DNA of 64,000 nt, from positions 1 through 64,000 of IMG/VR virus record IMGVR_UViG_3300011934_000017, one strand, 5' to 3'. The notes beneath the pieces are model-generated. The model was not told the DNA's origin. It saw nothing but the letters and a program-made list of their open reading frames with translations, and did not search any database. This document shows positions 8,154-43,091 of this stretch, piece after piece. Position 1 is the first letter of the stretch; every line of letters begins with the position of its first letter. The position numbers and the translations under genes were made by a program.

Positions 8154-9242
8154 ATGCAACGAATCGCCGTATACGCAATCGCAAAGAACGAAGAAGAACA
8201 TGTGGATCGCTGGATGGAGTCTGCTCGATATGCTGATGGAATCTTCGTTTTAGATACAGGCAGTACCGACTTTACTAACACTTTCTTGCGCCAGCACGGT
8301 GTGAAGGTAATAGAGGCTCTTATTGAGCCTTTTCGCTTTGATGTAGCCCGTAACATGATTCTCAATCAAATAGATTCGGACAAATACGATTATGCTTTGT
8401 TTCTGGACATGGACGAAGTGTTGGAAGAAAACTGGTATTCGAATCTTCAGGAGATACTGCTAGAGCATCCTCACGCTACAGGACTCCACACACGTATGAT
8501 TTACACGGAGAACAGTGACGGTACTCCTGCTGTCACGTACAATCGTCTCATGTGTACCAAGGTAGGCGATTATGAATGGAAATATCCTGTACATGAGGTA
8601 CTTGTAGCGAAAGACGAAGAAAAGGCTAACGAAATTTACTCGGATATTCTGGTCTATCATTATCCCGATGAAGAAAAAAGCCGTTCAAGTTACCTGAATT
8701 TGTTGAAGCTAGGCGCTCGTGAAGAACCTAACGATCCTCGTTGTTCTCAGTATCTAGCACGGGAATACTTTTCTTTAGGTCAACACGAACACGCTATTCA
8801 AGAATATTCGAACCACCTAGCGCTCGAAAGTAACCCTTGGTTTCGATCAGAAAGCTATCGTAATATGGCGCACTGTTACGAACACCTTGGCCACACGTTA
8901 GAATCTAGGAACTGCCATTTGTTTTCTTGCGCCGAAGCTCCTGATATACGCGAGTCCTGGGGAGAAGCCTGTGCGTTCTACTATCGTATGGATAGAATAC
9001 ACTCGGCTTTGAGCTGTATTGAAAACATGTTAGATGTTCAAGAACCTCCTACACACTCCATTATCAGGAATGACGCTTATTACAACTCTTGGCCTCATCA
9101 CATGGCTGCCATTTGTTACGACAGACTAGGAGACGAAGAGAAAGCAAGACAGCATATCCAACTTGCTTTTCAGTTATCTCCAGGGGATCCTGCTATTGCT
9201 TCGGACCTGATGACCATCTGCGATATTCAGGTTCAACCCTAG
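8154..9242 (+). CDS. Family 2 glycosyltransferase with C-terminal TPR repeats
   Basis: IAKNEE...DTGSTD...FDVARN...LDMDE (DxD)...VHE; helical TPR-like C-terminal half. Confidence 0.85.
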   Translation: MQRIAVYAIAKNEEEHVDRWMESARYADGIFVLDTGSTDFTNTFLRQHGVKVIEALIEPFRFDVARNMILNQIDSDKYDYALFLDMDEVLEENWYSNLQEILLEHPHATGLHTRMIYTENSDGTPAVTYNRLMCTKVGDYEWKYPVHEVLVAKDEEKANEIYSDILVYHYPDEEKSRSSYLNLLKLGAREEPNDPRCSQYLAREYFSLGQHEHAIQEYSNHLALESNPWFRSESYRNMAHCYEHLGHTLESRNCHLFSCAEAPDIRESWGEACAFYYRMDRIHSALSCIENMLDVQEPPTHSIIRNDAYYNSWPHHMAAICYDRLGDEEKARQHIQLAFQLSPGDPAIASDLMTICDIQVQP

Positions 9243-11993: not shown

Positions 11994-12500
11994 ATGCGCC
12001 ACATGATAGCACTAGCTGATGCCAAGTGGGAAATCGGGCCGTACACAGGAAAGAATGGTATGTACTGTGCTGTTCAGCCTGATACGTTGTCTCTCCTCAC
12101 TCTGGTAGAACTGTGTAACGATCTAGGTGTTGTGTCTGATCCACGCAAGTTTCATTGCACGGTCATGTATAGCAAAGAACTTGCACCGGAACTTCCAAAA
12201 GGTTTAGACTTGACAGCAAAAGGCTACATTAATCATATTGAATGGTGGGCAGGGCATGATGAAAAAGGCTATTTAACTGCCTCTATTCGAAGCCCTGAGC
12301 TAGAGTCGCATCATGCTGTTCTAAAAGAGTTAGGTGCTAAACATTCCTACGATTCGTACAGCGCTCACGTAACCTTGACTTCTGGAGTTAAGTTTACAGG
12401 CGCTTTACGAAGGGATGTTATTGGTATCAACAATCAGTTATCTCGGCGTCCTATTCCTGTCGTGTTCGATAGATTCTCGATTAGCGACGTTAAGGACTGA
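11994..12500 (+). CDS. acb1: 2H phosphoesterase, T4 gp57B/Acb1-like anti-CBASS nuclease
   Basis: Two HxT motifs (KFHCTVMYSK, YSAHVTL); GMYCAV, LGAKHSYDSY and IPVVFDR parallel T4 gp57B motifs as I recall them. Confidence 0.75.
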   Translation: MRHMIALADAKWEIGPYTGKNGMYCAVQPDTLSLLTLVELCNDLGVVSDPRKFHCTVMYSKELAPELPKGLDLTAKGYINHIEWWAGHDEKGYLTASIRSPELESHHAVLKELGAKHSYDSYSAHVTLTSGVKFTGALRRDVIGINNQLSRRPIPVVFDRFSISDVKD

Positions 12501-34596: not shown

Positions 34597-35418
34597 ATGG
34601 AAACTAAGCAACCAAGACAGGAACATTTAATATTTGATTGCCTAGAGCGCATTCAAAAGTTAGACAACGAACCTAACAGACCTATTAGCGAATATAGTCT
34701 GTCACATTCCGTTCAAACCAAAAAGAAGATAGCAGACCTGTTAAAAGAATGCCTTAAAGACCTTTTTCAGATAAGTGTTCGGGATGCTGAATTTTATGCG
34801 TATGCCAAAATGTTGTTGTCTATGTTCTTTAAGCAGCAAGAGGACAAAATTTACGACTTCGATGTTAGAATAAGTCCTAGAAGTGATACTATTGATATGC
34901 TTTTCGAACAAGAGGATACGCCTACCGTTTCGTTTGAGTATGACAAACCGTTAAGACGTCCTCGTACCAACTGGCATACGTTTTTTATGGATCAAGCATT
35001 TCAAGCGGCTGAGCGATCTTCTTGTGCTTCAGGACGAAGAGTAGGTGCTACGTTCGTAAAAAACAAAGCACCTCTAGTAACATCTTACAATGGAGTGCCT
35101 TCTAAATACCCACACCCTGTTGAATGTCCTCGTTTGGTAGCAGGATGCGTCAGCGGAGAAGGACTAGATATGTGTCCTTGTAACCACGCAGAAATGAATG
35201 GGCTTGCTATTGCTGCGAACAAAGGCATTTCTTTAGCTGGAAGTATTTTGTATTGTACTTCAAAGCCGTGCGCTGGTTGCATGGGTATTCTCGCAAACGT
35301 AGGTCTGGATTCTATCGTGTATCACGACGACTATCCTCATCCACTTTCAAAGAAAATTTCAGATTACGCTAAACTCAAAGTGTTTAGTATTCACGAACTG
35401 TTAGGAGTTAAAGAATGA
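34597..35418 (+). CDS. dCMP deaminase with an N-terminal extension
   Basis: RSSC...VGA, YNG.P, HAEMN, T.KPCAGC. Confidence 0.88.
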   Translation: METKQPRQEHLIFDCLERIQKLDNEPNRPISEYSLSHSVQTKKKIADLLKECLKDLFQISVRDAEFYAYAKMLLSMFFKQQEDKIYDFDVRISPRSDTIDMLFEQEDTPTVSFEYDKPLRRPRTNWHTFFMDQAFQAAERSSCASGRRVGATFVKNKAPLVTSYNGVPSKYPHPVECPRLVAGCVSGEGLDMCPCNHAEMNGLAIAANKGISLAGSILYCTSKPCAGCMGILANVGLDSIVYHDDYPHPLSKKISDYAKLKVFSIHELLGVKE

Positions 35419-35744
35419 ACTACGATCCTAATCTAACCAACAGTGGTCGTATGGCTACTCAAACAGTCAAATTGGAATTTCAATTATGGGAAAGCAAAGC
35501 ATATTATGAAATAAAAGTAGGCGGCAACTGTACGGGACTTACTGTGATTGATTGTGCTGTAAGCAACCTTTACGATAAGCTTCCTTCTCTCTATGAGAAT
35601 GCCGATCTGCCTTACATCTTACTTGAAGATGAAAAAGGCAATACCTTAGAAACAGCAGACGAAGATGAAAAAGGCGAAGACTGGTTGAAAGATATGCTAG
35701 TGAAAGCCGAAATCGTTAAAATTGAACCCGATACCCGAGATTGA
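35415..35744 (+). CDS. Conserved phage protein (DUF5406-like)
   Basis: NYDPNLT.SGRMA.QTV...VGGNC.G...EDWLKDMLV; family recognised from memory. Confidence 0.6.
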   Translation: MNYDPNLTNSGRMATQTVKLEFQLWESKAYYEIKVGGNCTGLTVIDCAVSNLYDKLPSLYENADLPYILLEDEKGNTLETADEDEKGEDWLKDMLVKAEIVKIEPDTRD

Positions 35745-35747
35745 ATC

Positions 35748-36530
35748 ATGAACAAAGAAACACTTGCTTTATATCCTTCCAGCTTTGAACTATCCTACGA
35801 ACAGCTAGAAGAAATGCTGAAGCTACAGCAGCAGGCTAACGCTGTAATGATAAAAGGCGATGAAGATACGCCTTACTACAGGGCTTCTGTTGTTGAAAGC
35901 GTGGAAGCTATTCAGCACTTTGGTTACAAGTGGTGGAAAGCAACAGAATCCGATATCGGTCAGACTAAGATGGAGTTGATTGATATTCTCCACTTCGCGC
36001 TGTCTGACTTCCTTAAAGAACCATCGAACAACGATCTTGTCTACGATGCTTTAGAGCTTGCACGTAGTCTGGCAGAGCCTGTTGTTATCTATCCTATCGG
36101 CTCGTTGTTGCATGATAAAACTTACCTAGACAACAGATCAACACTTGCCGCCATGCGAGTAGGTGATTGCATTATTCACCAACTATATTCTTTGGATTTG
36201 CTTACTTTCAATGATCTGGTCGAGCAGCTAATCTTTGTAAGCCTGAAAGACGGTAAGACCAGCTTTCCACATCTGTATCTTCTGTTTGAAAAGCTCGATA
36301 TGGTGCCTATTGAAGTGCATGGTCTATACGTCGGTAAAAACACGTTGAATAAGTTTCGTATGGCTAACGGACAGAAGGAAAACACGTATTACAAAACGTG
36401 GGACGGAAGAGAAGACAACGAGCATCTAACAGACTTCATTTTGCAGAGCGCTGATAAGGGAGAAAAACTTACGGCAAAAACCGTGTATAATTTCTTAGCA
36501 GCTACCTACTCGAACTGCGAACTATCTTAA
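35748..36530 (+). CDS. dut: Dimeric (all-alpha) dUTPase
   Basis: ESVE...GYKWWK, MELIDILHF, Y.GKN.LN.FR..NG, W.GREDNEHL. Confidence 0.85.
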   Translation: MNKETLALYPSSFELSYEQLEEMLKLQQQANAVMIKGDEDTPYYRASVVESVEAIQHFGYKWWKATESDIGQTKMELIDILHFALSDFLKEPSNNDLVYDALELARSLAEPVVIYPIGSLLHDKTYLDNRSTLAAMRVGDCIIHQLYSLDLLTFNDLVEQLIFVSLKDGKTSFPHLYLLFEKLDMVPIEVHGLYVGKNTLNKFRMANGQKENTYYKTWDGREDNEHLTDFILQSADKGEKLTAKTVYNFLAATYSNCELS

Positions 36531-37353: not shown

Positions 37354-37584
37354 ATGCTTATACGTCCAGAAAGTCATGGAATACAAATCATTCGTAAAAT
37401 CTTTCAGGTTAAACAGGCAGTGCTTTTGGACGCAAGATATTCAGGAAAGAGCGTAGTGGTCTATCGCTCTTTTATAGGGCGTCTATTCAAACCTCAACGA
37501 TACGCTACTTTGAAGGAGATAATGAAGTATGAGGATTCGAGGTATTCGAAAAACACTAAGAAAGCTGTTTCGCGTGAGACCTGA
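37354..37584 (+). CDS. Small hypothetical protein (paralog of the next ORF)
   Basis: VYRSFIGRLFK shared with 37529..37774. Confidence 0.65.
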   Translation: MLIRPESHGIQIIRKIFQVKQAVLLDARYSGKSVVVYRSFIGRLFKPQRYATLKEIMKYEDSRYSKNTKKAVSRET

Positions 37585-37774
37585 AGTGTTGTGGTGTCCT
37601 GAAAGTCCTGGAATGCGCGTCATGGTATATCGTTCTTTTATAGGACGTCTGTTCAAATCCAAACACTTTGCAACCTTAGGGGAATCAATAAAACACTCTA
37701 ATACAAAAATCGGTGCCCTACATCTAAAAAAGGATATGGAAAATGAAAAACAGAAACATAAGCCTTGCAGATAA
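37529..37774 (+). CDS. Small hypothetical protein (paralog of the previous ORF)
   Basis: VYRSFIGRLFK; RBS aaggag. Confidence 0.6.
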   Translation: MRIRGIRKTLRKLFRVRPEVLWCPESPGMRVMVYRSFIGRLFKSKHFATLGESIKHSNTKIGALHLKKDMENEKQKHKPCR

Positions 37775-38213
37775 GAGTCGTTACTCAGACGAAGAAGCCG
37801 AAGCTCAAAGAAAAGCTAAGGTATATCCTTCGCTAAGCCGAGAATACGCGGAAAGCATTATTGACGCTATCCATTATGACATTCTCAGTGATGGCAAAAC
37901 CACTGCCTGCACCTTAGAGATTTTCAACAATAGCTTTTCCGTTCAAGGTCATAGCAGTTGCCTAGATGCTCGAAACTTTGATGCTAAGCTCGGACGTACT
38001 TATTCGTACAAACGGGCCTTTGACAGGCTGATGTTAATTGTGGCCGCAACTGTTGCAGCCTTCGATAAAGACTGGAAAGAGAATCGTAGACTAGAAAATT
38101 TAGCACAGGAACTGGAGTCTGATATACAACACTATACAGACAACTACCTGACTGATGCCGACGGTGAAATGTTGAACCTGCTAGTCAAATACAAGAAAAT
38201 GCTCGAAGTGTAA
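37743..38213 (+). CDS. Phage gp49/66-family protein (Acb4-like nucleotide sponge candidate)
   Basis: ESII..IHY...TT.CTL...NSFSV.G.SSC.D..NFD..LG... Confidence 0.7.
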   Translation: MKNRNISLADKSRYSDEEAEAQRKAKVYPSLSREYAESIIDAIHYDILSDGKTTACTLEIFNNSFSVQGHSSCLDARNFDAKLGRTYSYKRAFDRLMLIVAATVAAFDKDWKENRRLENLAQELESDIQHYTDNYLTDADGEMLNLLVKYKKMLEV

Positions 38214-38259
38214 ATAAACAGTGCTATACAAAAACATCATTTAACTAAAGGAAGTAATC

Positions 38260-38676
38260 ATGAAAGGCAATGCAAAGAACGATCCAAAGACCAAGACAAT
38301 ACCACCGAAAACTGGTTCTACAAAAGCAAAAGAAACTCCTGGAACCCAAACAACTTCTGGTATCGCTTTGGAAGCAGGCTTCAAAGAAGCTAAGATTTTT
38401 GAAGTAGAGTATCACCTGACCTGCAAGTGCGACACATTCAACGCTTTTGAAGGCCACCGCAGCTACGTGGAAGACCTTGGAAATCGCCGAGCCATGTTCG
38501 CCGTAAGTAAAGAAAACCTGACAGTTGATGGATCATTCGATACTTCGAAGGTACTTCAGGTTGTACGTGATCAAATTCTGATTCCTGAGTTTGAAGGCCA
38601 TGAAGCAATCAACATTCAGATCGTCAATGTGGTAAACCGAAGTGAAGTAGGTATGCCGACTTTCACTATGTTGTGA
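38260..38676 (+). CDS. Hypothetical protein
   Basis: RBS aagga; TAAATA at 38210. Confidence 0.7.
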   Translation: MKGNAKNDPKTKTIPPKTGSTKAKETPGTQTTSGIALEAGFKEAKIFEVEYHLTCKCDTFNAFEGHRSYVEDLGNRRAMFAVSKENLTVDGSFDTSKVLQVVRDQILIPEFEGHEAINIQIVNVVNRSEVGMPTFTML

Positions 38677-38683
38677 GCTTCCA

Positions 38684-38872
38684 ATGTCGATAATCCGCGA
38701 TAACTTGATGAAGGAAAAGAACTACACCCCGTATTGCGGAAATACAAGTTGCTCAGTCATGCCACGATCATTCTTTAACGGTTCTCAGTTTCAGTGCTCG
38801 TGGTGTGGTTGGCAATCAAAATTCGATGACGAATTTATTTCGCAATACAAAGCAAAGTGGGGCAAGCAATGA
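38684..38872 (+). CDS. Small conserved Zn-binding phage protein
   Basis: YTPYCG...C..MPR..F.G.QF.C..CGW.S.F. Confidence 0.7.
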   Translation: MSIIRDNLMKEKNYTPYCGNTSCSVMPRSFFNGSQFQCSWCGWQSKFDDEFISQYKAKWGKQ

Positions 38873-39129
38873 ACAGACCTAAGCGAGACTCAAAAGAATT
38901 TTGGGTAGCTTTAGACGGTGTTGTATCTTGTCAGACAGTGCTGGCTACAAACAGTCCTTCTATGTGGTACGCACCTGAAGAGAAGTCTACACTCACTGTG
39001 GACGTGCACCTATTTGAACGACGTAACGATGCTAATGAAAAGGCACACAAGTATCTGGATCGCTTTGAGCAGATGATTTACGAAAAGCGAAAAGCATTGG
39101 TACCTCGCGCCATTCCCATTGAATATTAA
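38869..39129 (+). CDS. Hypothetical protein
   Basis: ATGA overlap with the upstream stop. Confidence 0.65.
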   Translation: MNRPKRDSKEFWVALDGVVSCQTVLATNSPSMWYAPEEKSTLTVDVHLFERRNDANEKAHKYLDRFEQMIYEKRKALVPRAIPIEY

Positions 39130-39138
39130 GGCTTTGCT

Positions 39139-39318
39139 ATGAAACCTATAGAAATGTCTTTGGAAGAGAGGCTTCAAAAGCTGAACAAAGGCTCCGCTAC
39201 CGATTTTCGTGCTATGCTTGTGCGTATGAAAAAGGACGATAAGTCAGAGCAAGAAATTTCAGAAGCGTCCGATGCTTACTTAAAAAAGCGCGGTATCGGT
39301 AAATACAAGATACGGTGA
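39139..39318 (+). CDS. Small hypothetical protein (59 aa; not in the ORF track)
   Basis: Read by hand: MKPIEMSLEERLQKLNKG...KKRGIGKYKIR*; fills the gap exactly. Confidence 0.65.
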   Translation: MKPIEMSLEERLQKLNKGSATDFRAMLVRMKKDDKSEQEISEASDAYLKKRGIGKYKIR

Positions 39319-39328
39319 GGAGCAGTAA

Positions 39329-39709
39329 ATGGCAAATGAAACTGAAGTTACTGTTTGGGGTATCGGTCTTGAGCAAGAAGAAATTCAAACGTTCTCTGAT
39401 GCTCTTGTGTCTCTAGGTTTTCCACACTTATGCTCTATCGTGGACGAGAATCAGACTGGAGGCACAAGAACTGGAAATTTTAAAGCGTATGGTGCCTGCT
39501 TTCGATGCTTTAACGAAATGGGTAATCTGTTTCCGGTAGAACATGTCATATCGCTGTTTTCCGGCCTTGCAATAGACAGCAATTTTGAAGGTGGAATCAT
39601 TGTCGATGACGATCATACAGGTGAAACGCATAACCTTCTATTCTCTCCGAAGGGTGCCAAAGTACACAGCAAATCCTTAGAGTACGGCGTTATACACGTT
39701 AGAAGCTAA
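39329..39709 (+). CDS. Hypothetical protein
   Basis: RBS aggag. Confidence 0.7.
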   Translation: MANETEVTVWGIGLEQEEIQTFSDALVSLGFPHLCSIVDENQTGGTRTGNFKAYGACFRCFNEMGNLFPVEHVISLFSGLAIDSNFEGGIIVDDDHTGETHNLLFSPKGAKVHSKSLEYGVIHVRS

Positions 39710-39737
39710 GCAAGCAATCTTAAATAGGAATTCAACT

Positions 39738-40091
39738 ATGGGCAATCAATACGCTGACCGTGATATAATGGGTTTAGACGATAAAGGTGGTCACTACTTT
39801 CGTCATGTAAACGCGATGACAGCCGAAGACTTGCATTCTAAAAGTGATATTGCGGCTGAATTGGCTTACAGGGACTACCAGATTGACCAGCTTGAAAAGC
39901 GCTTGAAAAACTCTTTGGAAGCATTGAAGTACATTGACTCACCTATAAAGTATCTTCGAGAAGAGGCAGAACAAGAAGGTTCTGTATTGAATGCCTTTGC
40001 CTCGACAATAGTTGACGATCCGCACTTCCTTCGAGACATTGCACGAAAAGCCCTAGATAAGGAAGTTGAATTTCATCAGGAGCGATTATGA
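39738..40091 (+). CDS. Conserved phage protein (YAxRD...HVxAMTAExLHSKSDIAAELA family)
   Basis: Motif recognised from many proteobacterial phages; TAAATA at 39720. Confidence 0.7.
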   Translation: MGNQYADRDIMGLDDKGGHYFRHVNAMTAEDLHSKSDIAAELAYRDYQIDQLEKRLKNSLEALKYIDSPIKYLREEAEQEGSVLNAFASTIVDDPHFLRDIARKALDKEVEFHQERL

Positions 40092-40546: not shown

Positions 40547-40978
40547 ATGGCAAAAAACGCATACATGGCATCCGATAGTTTTGGAGTCGCGTTAGATTAT
40601 GCCGTTGCGTATTCTATAAATCGTGACTATTCCACAGCACCGGAGTTTCTTGAGTCTTTTAAACTAGATATTAAGAAAGGCAAAGTTCTTAATCATTTCG
40701 GCAAAATCTTCAATCCTACTGAAAACTCCGATCTTGCTCTTTCCTTGTTTTCTAATTTTGCGGTTAGCGTATTTCCGTTATCGGACGCGACATGGGGAGC
40801 AAGAGAATACATCACCGAAGCCGTAGGCCTATGTGTTGAAAGTGAATCTATGGATATCCCTACTGCTTATCGCACTGCTGGTCTTCGAGCATTAGCTGTG
40901 ACAAACACTGACGGCAAAATAGTCGTCTCCTCCAAAATGTGGGAATATCTCTCACAGTACGTCCACAAGAAGGTATAA
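40547..40978 (+). CDS. Hypothetical protein, weakly NinX/DUF2591-like
   Basis: LDYAVA...FNPTEN pattern. Confidence 0.55.
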   Translation: MAKNAYMASDSFGVALDYAVAYSINRDYSTAPEFLESFKLDIKKGKVLNHFGKIFNPTENSDLALSLFSNFAVSVFPLSDATWGAREYITEAVGLCVESESMDIPTAYRTAGLRALAVTNTDGKIVVSSKMWEYLSQYVHKKV

Positions 40979-40982
40979 GACA

Positions 40983-41294
40983 ATGGAACTTGCAAACAGA
41001 ATTTCATTGGATCACATTGAATCCTGCATCCACGCTGTAGAGTACACGACTCTTCGCAATACGGCTTCTGAAGTGGCAGCACCTGTTACAATCTGCCACG
41101 TTATGCTGAAAAACGGAAAGAATGTCATTGGCATTAACTACGGCGCCATTGATCCAGAACAGCACAGCGCTGAAATGGGTAAGAAGGAAGCTTACAAGCA
41201 AGCTATCGATAAACTGTTTGAGCTTGAAGGTTATGCTTTAATCAACAGGCACTTCGAAACAGGTTCGGGCCTTCTGATCGAAAATAAGGAGTAA
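40983..41294 (+). CDS. Phage gp49/66-family protein (second Acb4-like sponge candidate)
   Basis: ISLDHIES.I...Y...VTIC...LKNG..V.G...IDPE..SAEMG...A...AIDKLFELEGYAL. Confidence 0.75.
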   Translation: MELANRISLDHIESCIHAVEYTTLRNTASEVAAPVTICHVMLKNGKNVIGINYGAIDPEQHSAEMGKKEAYKQAIDKLFELEGYALINRHFETGSGLLIENKE

Positions 41295-41297
41295 TAT

Positions 41298-41723
41298 ATG
41301 CAAGCGCTGTACAAGTATCCGCTAGAACCGCTTAATCACGAGGGTGTTTCTATCGTCACAAAAGTGGGAATGATGGAAGCAGATGAACATGACTTCAACG
41401 AAAGCGAAGCTGGCGCTATGTATCAGATAATCAAGAAGCGTCTGGCTTACCACAGTGTTCCCTGCACCAAACATCTGATCCTGTATCTTTGCACGTTGGT
41501 TACCAATCCTGGTGCCGCAGTTCTTTTCGCGCATACAGTAGGCTGTATCTATGCGACTGTGGAAAGAGAAGTGACGGTACTTGACTTCTATGAGCGCTTT
41601 GCAGAAGGTATGCCTAGTGCATATACCCTGAGTAAAGCATGGGATGACCAAAAAGACGAAGGTGCGAATCACGTAGACTATGAAGATACGTGGACGATTG
41701 AAAACCTGAAGGCGGCTGCATAA
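41298..41723 (+). CDS. Hypothetical protein
   Basis: RBS aaggag. Confidence 0.7.
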   Translation: MQALYKYPLEPLNHEGVSIVTKVGMMEADEHDFNESEAGAMYQIIKKRLAYHSVPCTKHLILYLCTLVTNPGAAVLFAHTVGCIYATVEREVTVLDFYERFAEGMPSAYTLSKAWDDQKDEGANHVDYEDTWTIENLKAAA

Positions 41724-41726
41724 ACA

Positions 41727-42179
41727 ATGGAAACAGTCACAGTCTACACAGACGGTTCTTGCAGAAAGAATCCAGGTGCAGGCGGCTGGGCTGCTGTTCT
41801 ACGTAAAGGAAGTAAGAAGAGAATTCTACAAGGCGCAGATGCAGAAACCACCAATAACAGAATGGAAATGAAAGCTGTTATTGGTGCTCTGCGCTTCTTG
41901 GAGAATAAAGGGCCTTACAACGTAGAAGTATTCAGCGACTCTCAGTACGTCATAAAAGGCATATCACAATGGGTTCCTAACTGGCGTAGAATGGGCTGGA
42001 AAACGTCAGCAGGAGCAGACGTTAAGAACGGCGATCTTTGGAAGGAGATAGATTCTTTGCGAGGGTTCCATAATATCAACTGGAACTGGGTGCGGGGTCA
42101 CAATGGTGATGAATACAACGAATTGGCAGATAGACTAGCAAACGATGCCGCAGTCCAAGCGGGATACTATGAAAGCTGA
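41727..42179 (+). CDS. rnhA: Ribonuclease HI
   Basis: YTDGSC..NPG.GGW, TTNNRME, SDSQYV, VKN.DLW, WVRGH.G...NE.AD.LA. Confidence 0.95.
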   Translation: METVTVYTDGSCRKNPGAGGWAAVLRKGSKKRILQGADAETTNNRMEMKAVIGALRFLENKGPYNVEVFSDSQYVIKGISQWVPNWRRMGWKTSAGADVKNGDLWKEIDSLRGFHNINWNWVRGHNGDEYNELADRLANDAAVQAGYYES

Positions 42180-43054: not shown

Positions 43055-43091
43055 AAAAGGGAGTTCCTAAATCACTAGGAACTCCCTTTTT
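43055..43091. terminator. Bidirectional terminator between convergent blocks
   Basis: aaaagggagttccta-aatcac-taggaactccctttt(t). Confidence 0.9.

What the first reader, a model, noticed from the sequence alone, without database searches (positions are those of the whole stretch)
40983..41294. Second Acb4-like sponge: with Acb1 this gives a three-gene anti-signalling arsenal
Seen: a canonical-length family member 3 kb from the first copy and only distantly similar to it. With the Acb1-like nuclease in the head module, the window encodes two putative sequestering proteins and one degrading enzyme. Inference: layered, temporally separated counter-defence against cyclic-nucleotide immunity, possibly including hetero-oligomeric sponges.
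Basis: partly seen in the sequence, partly recalled or inferred. Interest (0 to 1): 0.6.

Follow-up and report, generated by a model that had tools for sequence, protein, structure and literature searches.

The report
Second, divergent Acb4-family sponge gene
A jumbo phage from a stromatolite metagenome carries a real second copy of the Acb4 family of small proteins that soak up bacterial alarm nucleotides, and this copy belongs to a rare branch with a rebuilt binding pocket, so it probably adds to the first copy and to an Acb1-like nuclease rather than duplicating them.

Summary
ORF 40983-41294 (+, 103 aa) matches Pfam PF13876, the Acb4 anti-CBASS sponge family, at 68 bits against a cut-off of 27. 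Its AlphaFold model is closest to SPO1 Acb4 (PDB 9e4w; VIA Z 9.4, TM 0.57-0.70). It co-folds as a homotetramer (ipSAE 0.90 against 0.00 for the best control), with the interfaces described for Acb4.

The 220-kb genome has exactly two PF13876 genes. The other is 37743-38213, 25% identical. It also has one Acb1-like 2H phosphodiesterase (11994-12500) between the head protease and the major capsid gene, with both HxT motifs intact.

New here: copy 2 belongs to a rare "NYGAIDP" subclade, 10 of 1,331 listed Acb4 homologs. None of the ten SPO1 cGAMP-contact residues is kept, and the pocket loop is one residue longer. Copy 1 keeps the Lys and both Phe contacts. Elsewhere this subclade occurs fused to Tad2, and also directly downstream of a Tad2 gene and another Acb4 gene.

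Both copies have orthologues (58-63% identity) in a related phage, under purifying selection. They are never sisters in the tree.

"Temporal separation" is untested. Hetero-oligomers look unlikely, with 4 of 56 interface-list entries identical. Ligands are unknown. This is a new member of a known family, with a plausible new specificity.

The parts
40983..41294 (+). Acb4 copy 2 (103 aa): PF13876 protein of the rare NYGAIDP subclade, predicted homotetrameric nucleotide-signal sponge
   Evidence: PF13876 at 68.2 bits. Model pLDDT 83.8 with alpha-beta-beta-beta-alpha topology. Best PDB match is 9e4w SPO1 Acb4. Tetramer ipSAE 0.90 against control 0.00. Pocket mapping. Orthologues P0004 and P0005 at 66% and 63% identity, dN/dS 0.14-0.24.
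37743..38213 (+). Acb4 copy 1 (156 aa): PF13876 core at residues 33-96 with a more canonical pocket (Lys, Phe and Phe contacts kept), plus a roughly 60-aa helical C-terminal extension of unknown nature
   Evidence: PF13876 at 37.9 bits. Direct phmmer hit to 9e4w Acb4, E 0.004. Model core pLDDT 87-95, top PDB hits 9e4w. Orthologue P0006 at 58% identity in a syntenic contig. PF21825 not detected.
11994..12500 (+). Acb1-like 2H phosphodiesterase (168 aa), 7 nt downstream of the head maturation protease gene
   Evidence: PF23474 Acb1 at 59.9 bits. 34% identity to T4 Acb1. H-x-T motifs align with T4 H44/T46 and H113. Neighbours annotated.
40547..40978 (+). 143-aa protein of unknown function immediately upstream of copy 2. 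This neighbourhood is conserved in two relatives.
   Evidence: Orthologue at 56% identity directly upstream of P0005 in L005. A 151-aa gene lies upstream of P0004 in L006. Only phrog_4389, of unknown function. Atlas search uninformative.
41298..41723 (+). 141-aa protein of unknown function immediately downstream of copy 2. This neighbourhood is conserved in two relatives.
   Evidence: Orthologue at 54% identity in L005. A 142-aa gene follows P0004 in L006. No Pfam or PHROG family. Atlas search uninformative.
41727..42179 (+). RNase H gene in the same tightly packed block. It marks the block as a replication and nucleotide-metabolism region, not a structural one.
   Evidence: PF00075 at 154.9 bits. 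90% identical orthologue in L005.
43055..43090 (.). 16-bp-stem hairpin between the converging + block (ends 43038) and the - block (ends 43095). Likely a bidirectional terminator that closes the unit containing both Acb4 genes.
   Evidence: Terminator scan.

Best explanation
ORF 40983-41294 encodes a true member of the Acb4 (PF13876) family of phage sponge proteins. A small dsRBD-like protomer assembles into a homotetramer. Its inter-subunit pockets bind and sequester a nucleotide second messenger made by a host defence system (CBASS-type or related), so the effector is never switched on. The protein belongs to a rare subclade marked by an invariant N-Y-G-A-I-D-P loop with a one-residue insertion. 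In this subclade the aromatic and charged residues that hold 3'3'-cGAMP in SPO1 Acb4 are all replaced. The paralogue 2.8 kb upstream keeps a more canonical pocket. The two sponges therefore most likely cover different signals, or the same signals with different selectivity. The Acb1-like phosphodiesterase degrades cyclic oligonucleotides enzymatically. Shown: family membership, fold, predicted tetramer, pocket divergence, conservation in relatives, and association of the subclade with Tad2. Inferred: ligand binding, ligand identity and the anti-defence effect.
For: PF13876 at 68 bits. PF13876 is equated with Acb4, and all eight purified homologues bound 3'3'-cGAMP, in Chang et al. 10.1101/2024.12.30.630793. 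Model pLDDT 83.8. Top PDB match is 9e4w Acb4: Foldseek prob 1.00, TM 0.57-0.70; VIA Z 9.4, rmsd 2.8 A over 75 residues, next unrelated entry Z 7.2. Homotetramer ipSAE 0.90 in three runs against a best control of 0.00, partner pLDDT 89, runs agreeing in at least 95% of contacts. This mark was reached by 20 of 30 solved homomers and 1 of 23 monomers. The three predicted interfaces are sheet-to-sheet (17-53), the end of alpha4 against the beta2-beta3 loop, and the beta3-alpha4 loop against another protomer's helices. They match the published description. All five family-invariant columns are kept. The NYGAIDP loop lies in the pocket-forming beta3-alpha4 loop. The motif occurs in 10 of 1,331 published homologues, always complete. 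The subclade is fused to Tad2 in L011. In L014 it sits directly after a Tad2 gene and another Acb4 gene. Orthologues of both copies occur in syntenic contigs of a relative, with dN/dS 0.14-0.24. The genes are accessory: PaBG has one Acb4 and one Acb1, Lu11 and HRDY3 have neither, NCTB has Acb1 only.
Against: No binding data exist for this protein or, as far as I could find, for any NYGAIDP-type member. 0 of 10 SPO1 ligand-contact residues are identical, so nucleotide binding is not guaranteed. The alignment behind the fold and the tetramer is shallow (23 rows) and was partly gathered with the NYGAIDP motif as the search pattern. The tetramer pass may reflect the model's memory of 9e4w (caveat). 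Host and host defences are unknown (stromatolite metagenome). No expression data exist.
Confidence: 0.7

Rival explanations
1. Redundant paralogue. Copy 2 binds the same signals as copy 1 (3'3'-cGAMP and related dinucleotides) and only adds dosage or a backup.
For: All eight diverse Acb4 homologues tested by Chang et al. bound 3'3'-cGAMP despite sequence divergence. Contact residues vary even among proven binders; N4 Acb4 shares only 3 of 10 with SPO1.
Against: Both stacking aromatics kept in SPO1, N4, Axy24 and copy 1 (Phe or Tyr in Pm86) are replaced in copy 2 (F48 to K, F62 to H), and the loop has an insertion. The two types sit side by side in an independent phage (L014). Both are kept under purifying selection in a relative. 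The copies are never sisters in 200 bootstrap trees, so this is not a recent duplication.
Confidence: 0.18
2. The NYGAIDP subclade has left the sponge function. It uses the dsRBD-like fold or the tetramer for something else, such as RNA binding or binding a host protein.
For: 0 of 10 SPO1 contact residues are kept. After 9e4w, the next structural neighbours are Rv2632c and Rv1738, ribosome-associated proteins and release factors, and dsRBD proteins. Some subclade members sit in long open frames with putative membrane-spanning N-termini.
Against: The most conserved block of the subclade is exactly the loop that forms the ligand pocket in Acb4. The predicted tetramer keeps that loop at a subunit interface. 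The subclade is fused to, or lies next to, the known sponge Tad2.
Confidence: 0.1
3. The two paralogues form mixed tetramers with hybrid pockets.
For: Both share the Acb4 fold, lie in one co-directional block that ends at a shared terminator, and Acb4 pockets are built from three protomers.
Against: Only 4 of 56 interface-list entries are identical, with gaps in the sheet interface and an insertion in alpha4 of copy 1. The homotetramer of copy 2 is confidently predicted alone. Most phages with an NYGAIDP-type gene have no second PF13876 gene (18 of 20 records).
Confidence: 0.04

Closest known systems
Bacillus phage SPO1 Acb4 (gp1.3; PDB 9e4w), founder of the Acb4/PF13876 sponge family
   Same: Same Pfam family, similar size (103 against 96 aa) and the same alpha-beta-beta-beta-alpha protomer (Z 9.4, TM up to 0.70). 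The same tetramer with the same three interface types is predicted. It is encoded among small accessory genes.
   Different: About 23-26% identity. None of the ten 3'3'-cGAMP contact residues is identical. There is a one-residue insertion in the pocket loop. Ligand unknown.
Escherichia phage N4 Acb4 and Pasteurella phage Pm86 Acb4-Tad2 fusion (experimentally active Gram-negative members)
   Same: Best tblastn matches among cultured phages, at 32-37% identity over about 90% of the length. The conserved core is shared (T, N, G, G, A columns; the '...LEGY' helix).
   Different: N4 and Pm86 have the majority 'NGF...SACVDP' pocket; Axy24 has the close variant 'NGF...SACVCKENF'. Copy 2 has 'NGK...NYGAIDP..H'. 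N4 binds 3'3'-c-di-AMP at about 111 nM and triggers PanDA and Panoptes. Nothing comparable is known for the NYGAIDP type.
NYGAIDP-type Acb4 homologues, e.g. the 132-aa protein of Pseudomonas phage Bise and proviral copies in Delftia and Aromatoleum
   Same: Same signature loop and the same replaced pocket residues. 35-56% identity over the core.
   Different: Copy 2 and its two metagenomic orthologues form their own long branch (97/100 support). They lack the N-terminal insertion or fusions of many members. Position 47 is Asn or Ser where most members have Lys.
T4 Acb1 + Acb2; N4 Acb4 + Tad2; Pseudomonas phage Ab09 Acb4-Sequestin + Bes1/Bes2 (multi-gene anti-signalling sets)
   Same: One phage combines several proteins that remove or block nucleotide immune signals. 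In T4 and in this phage the set pairs a degrading enzyme with one or more sponges.
   Different: Here the set is two divergent Acb4 paralogues plus Acb1 in a roughly 220-kb PaBG-like jumbo phage. No Tad2, Sequestin or fusion was detected. The Acb1 gene is 25 kb away from the sponges.

Membership tests
Acb4 (PF13876 Phage_gp49_66) | Sequence match to the family profile above the curated threshold | tested here: met
   68.2 bits against cut-off 27, residues 7-87 on profile positions 1-79 of 82. Copy 1 scores 37.9 bits.
Acb4 (PF13876 Phage_gp49_66) | dsRBD-like alpha-beta-beta-beta-alpha protomer superposable on SPO1 Acb4 | tested here: met
   Model pLDDT 83.8. 9e4w chains are the top hits: Foldseek prob 1.00, TM 0.57-0.70, rmsd 2.0-2.6 A over 73-76 columns for all but one chain. 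VIA Z 9.4 over 75 residues against 7.2 for the next entry.
Acb4 (PF13876 Phage_gp49_66) | Homotetrameric pinwheel built from a sheet-to-sheet dimer and an alpha4 / beta2-beta3-loop joint | tested here: met
   In silico only. ipSAE 0.90 in three runs against best control 0.00. Interface residues 17-53; 81-91 with 43-46; 53-60 with 5-7, 28-32 and 80-99, compared with the published description. The pass may draw on memory of 9e4w. SEC-MALS is needed.
Acb4 (PF13876 Phage_gp49_66) | SPO1-type 3'3'-cGAMP contacts (K36, F48, E49, V56, Y57, F62, N63, I66, T70, K81) | tested here: not met
   Copy 2 has P34, K46, N47, A55, I56, H61, S62, M65, E69 and E80: 0 of 10 identical, plus a one-residue insertion. 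Copy 1 keeps K, F and F (3 of 10). N4 Acb4, a proven binder, also keeps only 3 of 10. So this set defines SPO1-like specificity rather than family membership.
Acb4 (PF13876 Phage_gp49_66) | High-affinity binding of a CBASS cyclic dinucleotide and rescue of phage from CBASS | not testable with these tools
   Needs purified protein and phage challenge assays.
Acb4 (PF13876 Phage_gp49_66) | Small phage-encoded protein among accessory or anti-defence genes, variably present among related phages | tested here: met
   103 aa, in a block of small ORFs. Relatives vary: PaBG has one copy, Lu11, HRDY3 and NCTB have none. The subclade lies next to or is fused with Tad2 elsewhere.
Acb1 (PF23474), for ORF 11994-12500 | Profile match and the two catalytic H-x-T/S motifs of the 2H phosphoesterase fold | tested here: met
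   59.9 bits against cut-off 27. H-C-T and H-V-T align with T4 H44-S-T46 and H113-I-T. Cleavage activity was not testable.
Sequestin (PF21825), for the C-terminal extension of copy 1 | Profile match or fold of the helical Sequestin domain, as in Acb4-Sequestin fusions | tested here: not met
   No PF21825 hit at E<=1 for the protein, for its C-terminus, or in the genome. The Axy24 homologue does carry PF13876 + PF21825, but the isolated C-termini do not align. The model of residues 111-156 has pLDDT 44-55, so the fold question stays open.

The most novel reading that the evidence does not exclude
The NYGAIDP-type proteins are a functionally distinct Acb4 subfamily. Their rebuilt pocket may capture a different immune signal than cGAMP or c-di-AMP. 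Alternatively it may be tuned to avoid the decoy dinucleotides that guard systems such as Panoptes and PanDA use to detect sponges. Under this reading, 'canonical Acb4 + NYGAIDP Acb4' is a recurring two-sponge module. It is seen here, in the tandem Tad2-Acb4-Acb4 island of L014, and possibly in G013.
Probability: 0.3. Interest if true: 0.65.

Novelty: new member of a known kind. Interest (0 to 1): 0.4.

Why it matters
Acb4 is described as the largest known anti-CBASS family, but only one structure and about a dozen binding profiles exist, and those I could identify by sequence (SPO1, N4, Pm86) have the majority pocket type. This window gives a natural side-by-side pair, a near-canonical copy and a rare rebuilt-pocket copy, kept together in two diverged phages. 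That is a direct handle on how sponge specificity diversifies. It also bears on whether phages stack sponges to widen coverage or to dodge sponge-sensing guard systems. A cultured phage with the same pocket type (Pseudomonas phage Bise) makes the question testable. If copy 2 simply binds cGAMP, the finding is an ordinary case of anti-defence redundancy.

Tried and rejected
1. Megablast of 37-43 kb against GenBank phages found no match. The phage is known only from metagenomes.

2. The word-based protein search found only 2 relatives of copy 2 and 1 of copy 1. This is a limit of that tool, not evidence of rarity.

3. phmmer of copy 2 against PDB sequences missed 9e4w. Only the fold comparison found it.

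4. Is the copy-1 C-terminus a Sequestin domain? No profile hit, no pairwise alignment, low-confidence model. Left open.

5. Tad2 and Sequestin elsewhere in the genome: none.

6. The sigma-70 promoter scan of 34-44 kb found fewer sites than the shuffles (12 against 17.6). It gives no timing information.

7. Sequencing runs: only two DNA holders, both stromatolite metagenomes and likely the source, and no RNA.

8. Atlas look-alikes for the two conserved neighbours (143 aa, 141 aa) gave scores of 0.93 or less with no coherent family. Uninformative.

9. The paralogue hetero-tetramer could not be co-folded, because the single complex-prediction job went to the homotetramer. Only interface identity was compared.

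10. Minus-strand ORFs overlapping the gene (65, 71 and 40 aa) have no support and were dismissed.

11. The literature search found nothing on Acb4 paralogues within one phage or on jumbo phages carrying both Acb1 and Acb4.

Full report
**What is at the coordinates**

The window is the first 64 kb of a 220,237-bp IMG/VR virus record with direct terminal repeats. Positions 40983-41294 hold an ATG-to-TAA ORF of 103 codons on the + strand. It starts 4 nt after the stop of the upstream gene. It ends 3 nt before the next start codon, whose AAGGAG ribosome-binding site lies inside the last codons of this ORF.

GC content is about 0.44, like its surroundings. The overlapping minus-strand ORFs are short and unsupported.

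**Family assignment**

The protein (P0001) matches Pfam PF13876 (Phage_gp49_66) at E 9.3e-19, 68.2 bits against a gathering score of 27, over nearly the whole profile. Chang et al. (bioRxiv 10.1101/2024.12.30.630793) showed that SPO1 gp1.3, a member of PF13876, is the anti-CBASS sponge Acb4. It is a 96-aa protein forming a pinwheel tetramer that binds four 3'3'-cGAMP molecules. Eight further purified homologues all bound 3'3'-cGAMP.

The 'first copy' is 37743-38213 (P0002, 156 aa, PF13876 37.9 bits). The two are 25% identical over 72 residues. The whole genome has exactly these two PF13876 matches.

**The Acb1-like gene**

T4 Acb1, taken from the T4 record, finds one relative in the genome, at 11994-12500, with 34% identity. 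That ORF scores 59.9 bits on PF23474 Acb1. It keeps both H-x-T motifs aligned with T4 H44/T46 and H113.

It lies 7 nt after a head maturation protease gene. An ATPase, a virion protein, the major head protein, tail sheath and tail tube genes follow.

**Fold and assembly**

I built a 23-row alignment from two metagenomic orthologues, IMG/VR relatives and part of copy 1. With it, AlphaFold2 gives mean pLDDT 83.8 and pTM 0.74. The topology is helix, three strands, then a long helix.

- Foldseek places the 9e4w chains first: prob 1.00, TM 0.57-0.70, rmsd about 2.0-2.6 A over 73-76 columns for all but one chain.
- VIA-align gives Z 9.4, rmsd 2.8 A and 75 aligned residues for 9e4w. The next entry, which is unrelated, scores 7.2.
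- Lower down come Rv2632c/Rv1738, release factors, hibernation factors and dsRBDs. Chang et al. report the release-factor, hibernation-factor and dsRBD neighbours.

Four copies co-fold with ipSAE 0.90 in all three runs, against 0.00 for the best of three controls. Partner pLDDT is 89 and at least 95% of contacts are shared between runs. In the tool's calibration this mark was reached by 20 of 30 solved homomers and 1 of 23 monomers. The tool warns that my own alignment and four copies differ from that calibration, and that a solved relative can be remembered.

The listed contacts fall into three sets:

- Strand residues 17-53 against the same residues of a partner.
- The end of the long helix (81-91) against the beta2-beta3 loop (43-46).
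- The beta3-alpha4 loop (53-60) against the N-terminus, the beta1-beta2 loop and the C-terminal helix of a third copy.

These correspond to the beta-sandwich dimer, the 'joint', and the ligand-pocket interface described for SPO1 Acb4.

**The pocket is rebuilt**

I aligned SPO1 gp1.3, N4 Acb4, the Acb4 domain of Pm86 ORF47, Achromobacter phage Axy24_076, both window copies and relatives. I then mapped the ten published 3'3'-cGAMP contacts.

- Copy 2 has P34, K46, N47, A55, I56, H61, S62, M65, E69 and E80 at the positions of K36, F48, E49, V56, Y57, F62, N63, I66, T70 and K81. None is identical.
- Copy 2 has one extra residue (I51) at the start of the pocket loop.
- Copy 1 keeps K, F and F (K52, F65, F79).
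- N4 keeps F, F and N.

Copy 2 shares the loop sequence N-Y-G-A-I-D-P followed by x-x-H with a small set of homologues. In Table S3 of Chang et al. (1,331 sequences), 'NYGAIDP' occurs 10 times. 'NYGA' and 'GAIDP' also occur 10 times each, so the motif is always complete. 'NGF' occurs 933 times and 'ENFD' 493 times.

One caution applies. My IMG/VR relatives were retrieved with NYGAIDP as one of the two search patterns, so motif invariance in my own alignment is partly by construction. The Table S3 counts are independent of that. I could not tell whether any of the eight proteins tested by Chang et al. is of this type.

**Context of the subclade elsewhere**

- In IMG/VR locus L011 an NYGAIDP-type domain is the C-terminal part of a 330-aa ORF whose N-terminal part is a Tad2-like domain (PF11195 85 bits; PF13876 67.7 bits).
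- In L014 three consecutive genes are a Tad2-like protein (78.8 bits), a divergent Acb4 (30.2 bits) and an NYGAIDP-type Acb4 (79.3 bits).
- Of 20 records with an NYGAIDP-type gene, two have a second PF13876 gene. The second copy in G013 is of the majority type.
- The cultured Pseudomonas phage Bise encodes an NYGAIDP-type protein of 132 aa.

Published work shows Acb4-Tad2 and Acb4-Sequestin fusions acting against CBASS and Thoeris. It also shows N4 Acb4 next to a Tad2-like gene. Together this places the subclade in the same anti-signalling neighbourhoods as proven sponges.

**Evolution in this phage lineage**

The major head protein is 67% identical to that of Pseudomonas jumbo phage PaBG, and 62% to Lu11 and HRDY3. 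The window is only about 42% GC.

- PaBG has one PF13876 gene, of the non-NYGAIDP type. It is 29% identical to copy 1 and 24% to copy 2. PaBG also has one Acb1-like gene, in another region.
- Lu11 and HRDY3 have neither gene. NCTB has only Acb1.

So all three genes are accessory.

A closer relative is present in run SRR29340318. Contig L041 carries an orthologue of copy 1 (P0006, 58% identity) in the same order of ribonucleotide reductase, dCMP deaminase, dUTPase-like and small genes. Contig L005 carries an orthologue of copy 2 (P0005, 63% identity), flanked by orthologues of the 143-aa and 141-aa genes, RNase H and the 297-aa gene. The two contigs do not overlap, so it is not proven that they come from one genome.

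Nei-Gojobori estimates for copy 2 against its orthologues give dN/dS of 0.14-0.24, with dS near saturation.

In a maximum-likelihood tree of 31 domains, the two window copies are never sisters (0 of 200 bootstrap trees). Each forms a well-supported pair or trio with its own orthologues. The backbone is poorly resolved. The pair is therefore old, or was acquired separately, and both members have been maintained.

**Mechanism and what remains inferred**

Most likely (about 0.7), copy 2 is a homotetrameric sponge for a nucleotide immune signal. Given that, I put roughly even odds on a ligand spectrum different from copy 1. No tool here can show binding.

Layering of two sponges with a nuclease is plausible. 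It parallels T4 (Acb1 + Acb2), where sponge and nuclease have different strengths against different CBASS operons.

'Temporal separation' has no support beyond map position:

- Both Acb4 genes lie in one co-directional block (about 34.6-43.0 kb) with dCMP deaminase, a dUTPase-like protein and RNase H. The block ends at a strong hairpin at 43055-43090.
- The Acb1-like gene follows the head protease.
- T4 acb1 also lies among late genes, yet Chang et al. cite the T4 Acb1 expression pattern as early.
- No RNA data exist for this phage.

Hetero-oligomers are unlikely. Only 2 of 22, 1 of 12 and 1 of 22 residues of the three interface sets are identical in copy 1, and there are indels.

**Copy 1 extension**

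P0002 has a C-terminal extension of about 60 residues, conserved in P0006. The best cultured-phage match, Axy24_076, is an Acb4-Sequestin fusion (PF13876 85 bits + PF21825 53 bits) of the same length.

PF21825 is not detected in P0002, and the isolated tails do not align. The model of that part is of low confidence. Its nature is unresolved.

**Verdict**

This is a real gene and a real Acb4-family member, with the predicted Acb4 architecture. The three-gene inventory is correct. The interesting part is that the second copy is not a simple duplicate. It is a rare pocket variant that recurs next to other sponges.

Temporal layering and mixed oligomers are unsupported. Novelty: a new member of a known family, with a reasonable chance of a new specificity class.

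No read-laying run was made.

Noticed in passing
window 38030-38213 (residues 97-156 of copy 1): Copy 1 carries a helical C-terminal extension of about 60 aa, conserved in its orthologue P0006. It has the same length and layout as the Acb4-Sequestin fusion of Achromobacter phage Axy24 (PF13876 + PF21825). No PF21825 signal is detected and the model is of low confidence. It may be a very divergent or novel second sponge module.
   Followed up: partly
L014:4831-6198 (IMG/VR UViG_3300033072_000514): Compact island of three consecutive genes: a Tad2-like protein, a divergent Acb4, and an NYGAIDP-type Acb4. This is an independent instance of two Acb4 types kept side by side.
   Followed up: yes
L011:5209-6198; also L007, L009, L010, L023: NYGAIDP-type Acb4 domains occur as C-terminal parts of long open frames. 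One has an N-terminal Tad2 domain (confirmed by Pfam). Several others have hydrophobic, membrane-helix-like N-termini. These may be real membrane-anchored fusions or over-extended ORFs in GC-rich DNA.
   Followed up: partly
window 37444-37526 and 37610-37692: Tandem duplication just upstream of copy 1: an 83-nt segment repeated 166 nt apart at 71% identity. It gives two overlapping small ORFs (37354-37584 and 37529-37774). Both match a single 57-aa gene in the relative L041.
   Followed up: partly
window 40547-40978 and 41298-41723: The 143-aa and 141-aa genes flanking copy 2 keep their positions in L005, where they have clear orthologues. In L006 similarly sized genes occupy the same positions, but I did not compare them. 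They have no recognisable family. They could be further counter-defence genes or functionally tied to copy 2.
   Followed up: partly
window 11994-12500 compared with PaBG (L034, L039): The Acb1-like gene sits between the head protease and the ATPase/capsid genes here. In PaBG the Acb1-like gene is about 130 kb from the capsid gene, and the stretch upstream of the ATPase holds a topoisomerase I and a 320-aa hypothetical gene instead. So acb1 appears to have moved or been gained separately.
   Followed up: partly
window 38213-40088 compared with L041:10465-11410: The stretch between copy 1 and the DUF7736 gene is a variable cassette of small ORFs. It holds six ORFs over 1.9 kb here and four over 1 kb in the relative. 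The orthologue of 38260-38676 is relocated next to copy 2's neighbour in L005. This is typical of an accessory or anti-defence hot spot.
   Followed up: partly
window 8154-9242 and 34597-36530: The window also encodes a beta-1,4-glycosyltransferase-like 'host takeover' protein, a dCMP deaminase and a dUTPase_2/MazG-like pyrophosphohydrolase. These hint at nucleotide-pool or DNA-modification functions that could themselves affect host defence.
   Followed up: no
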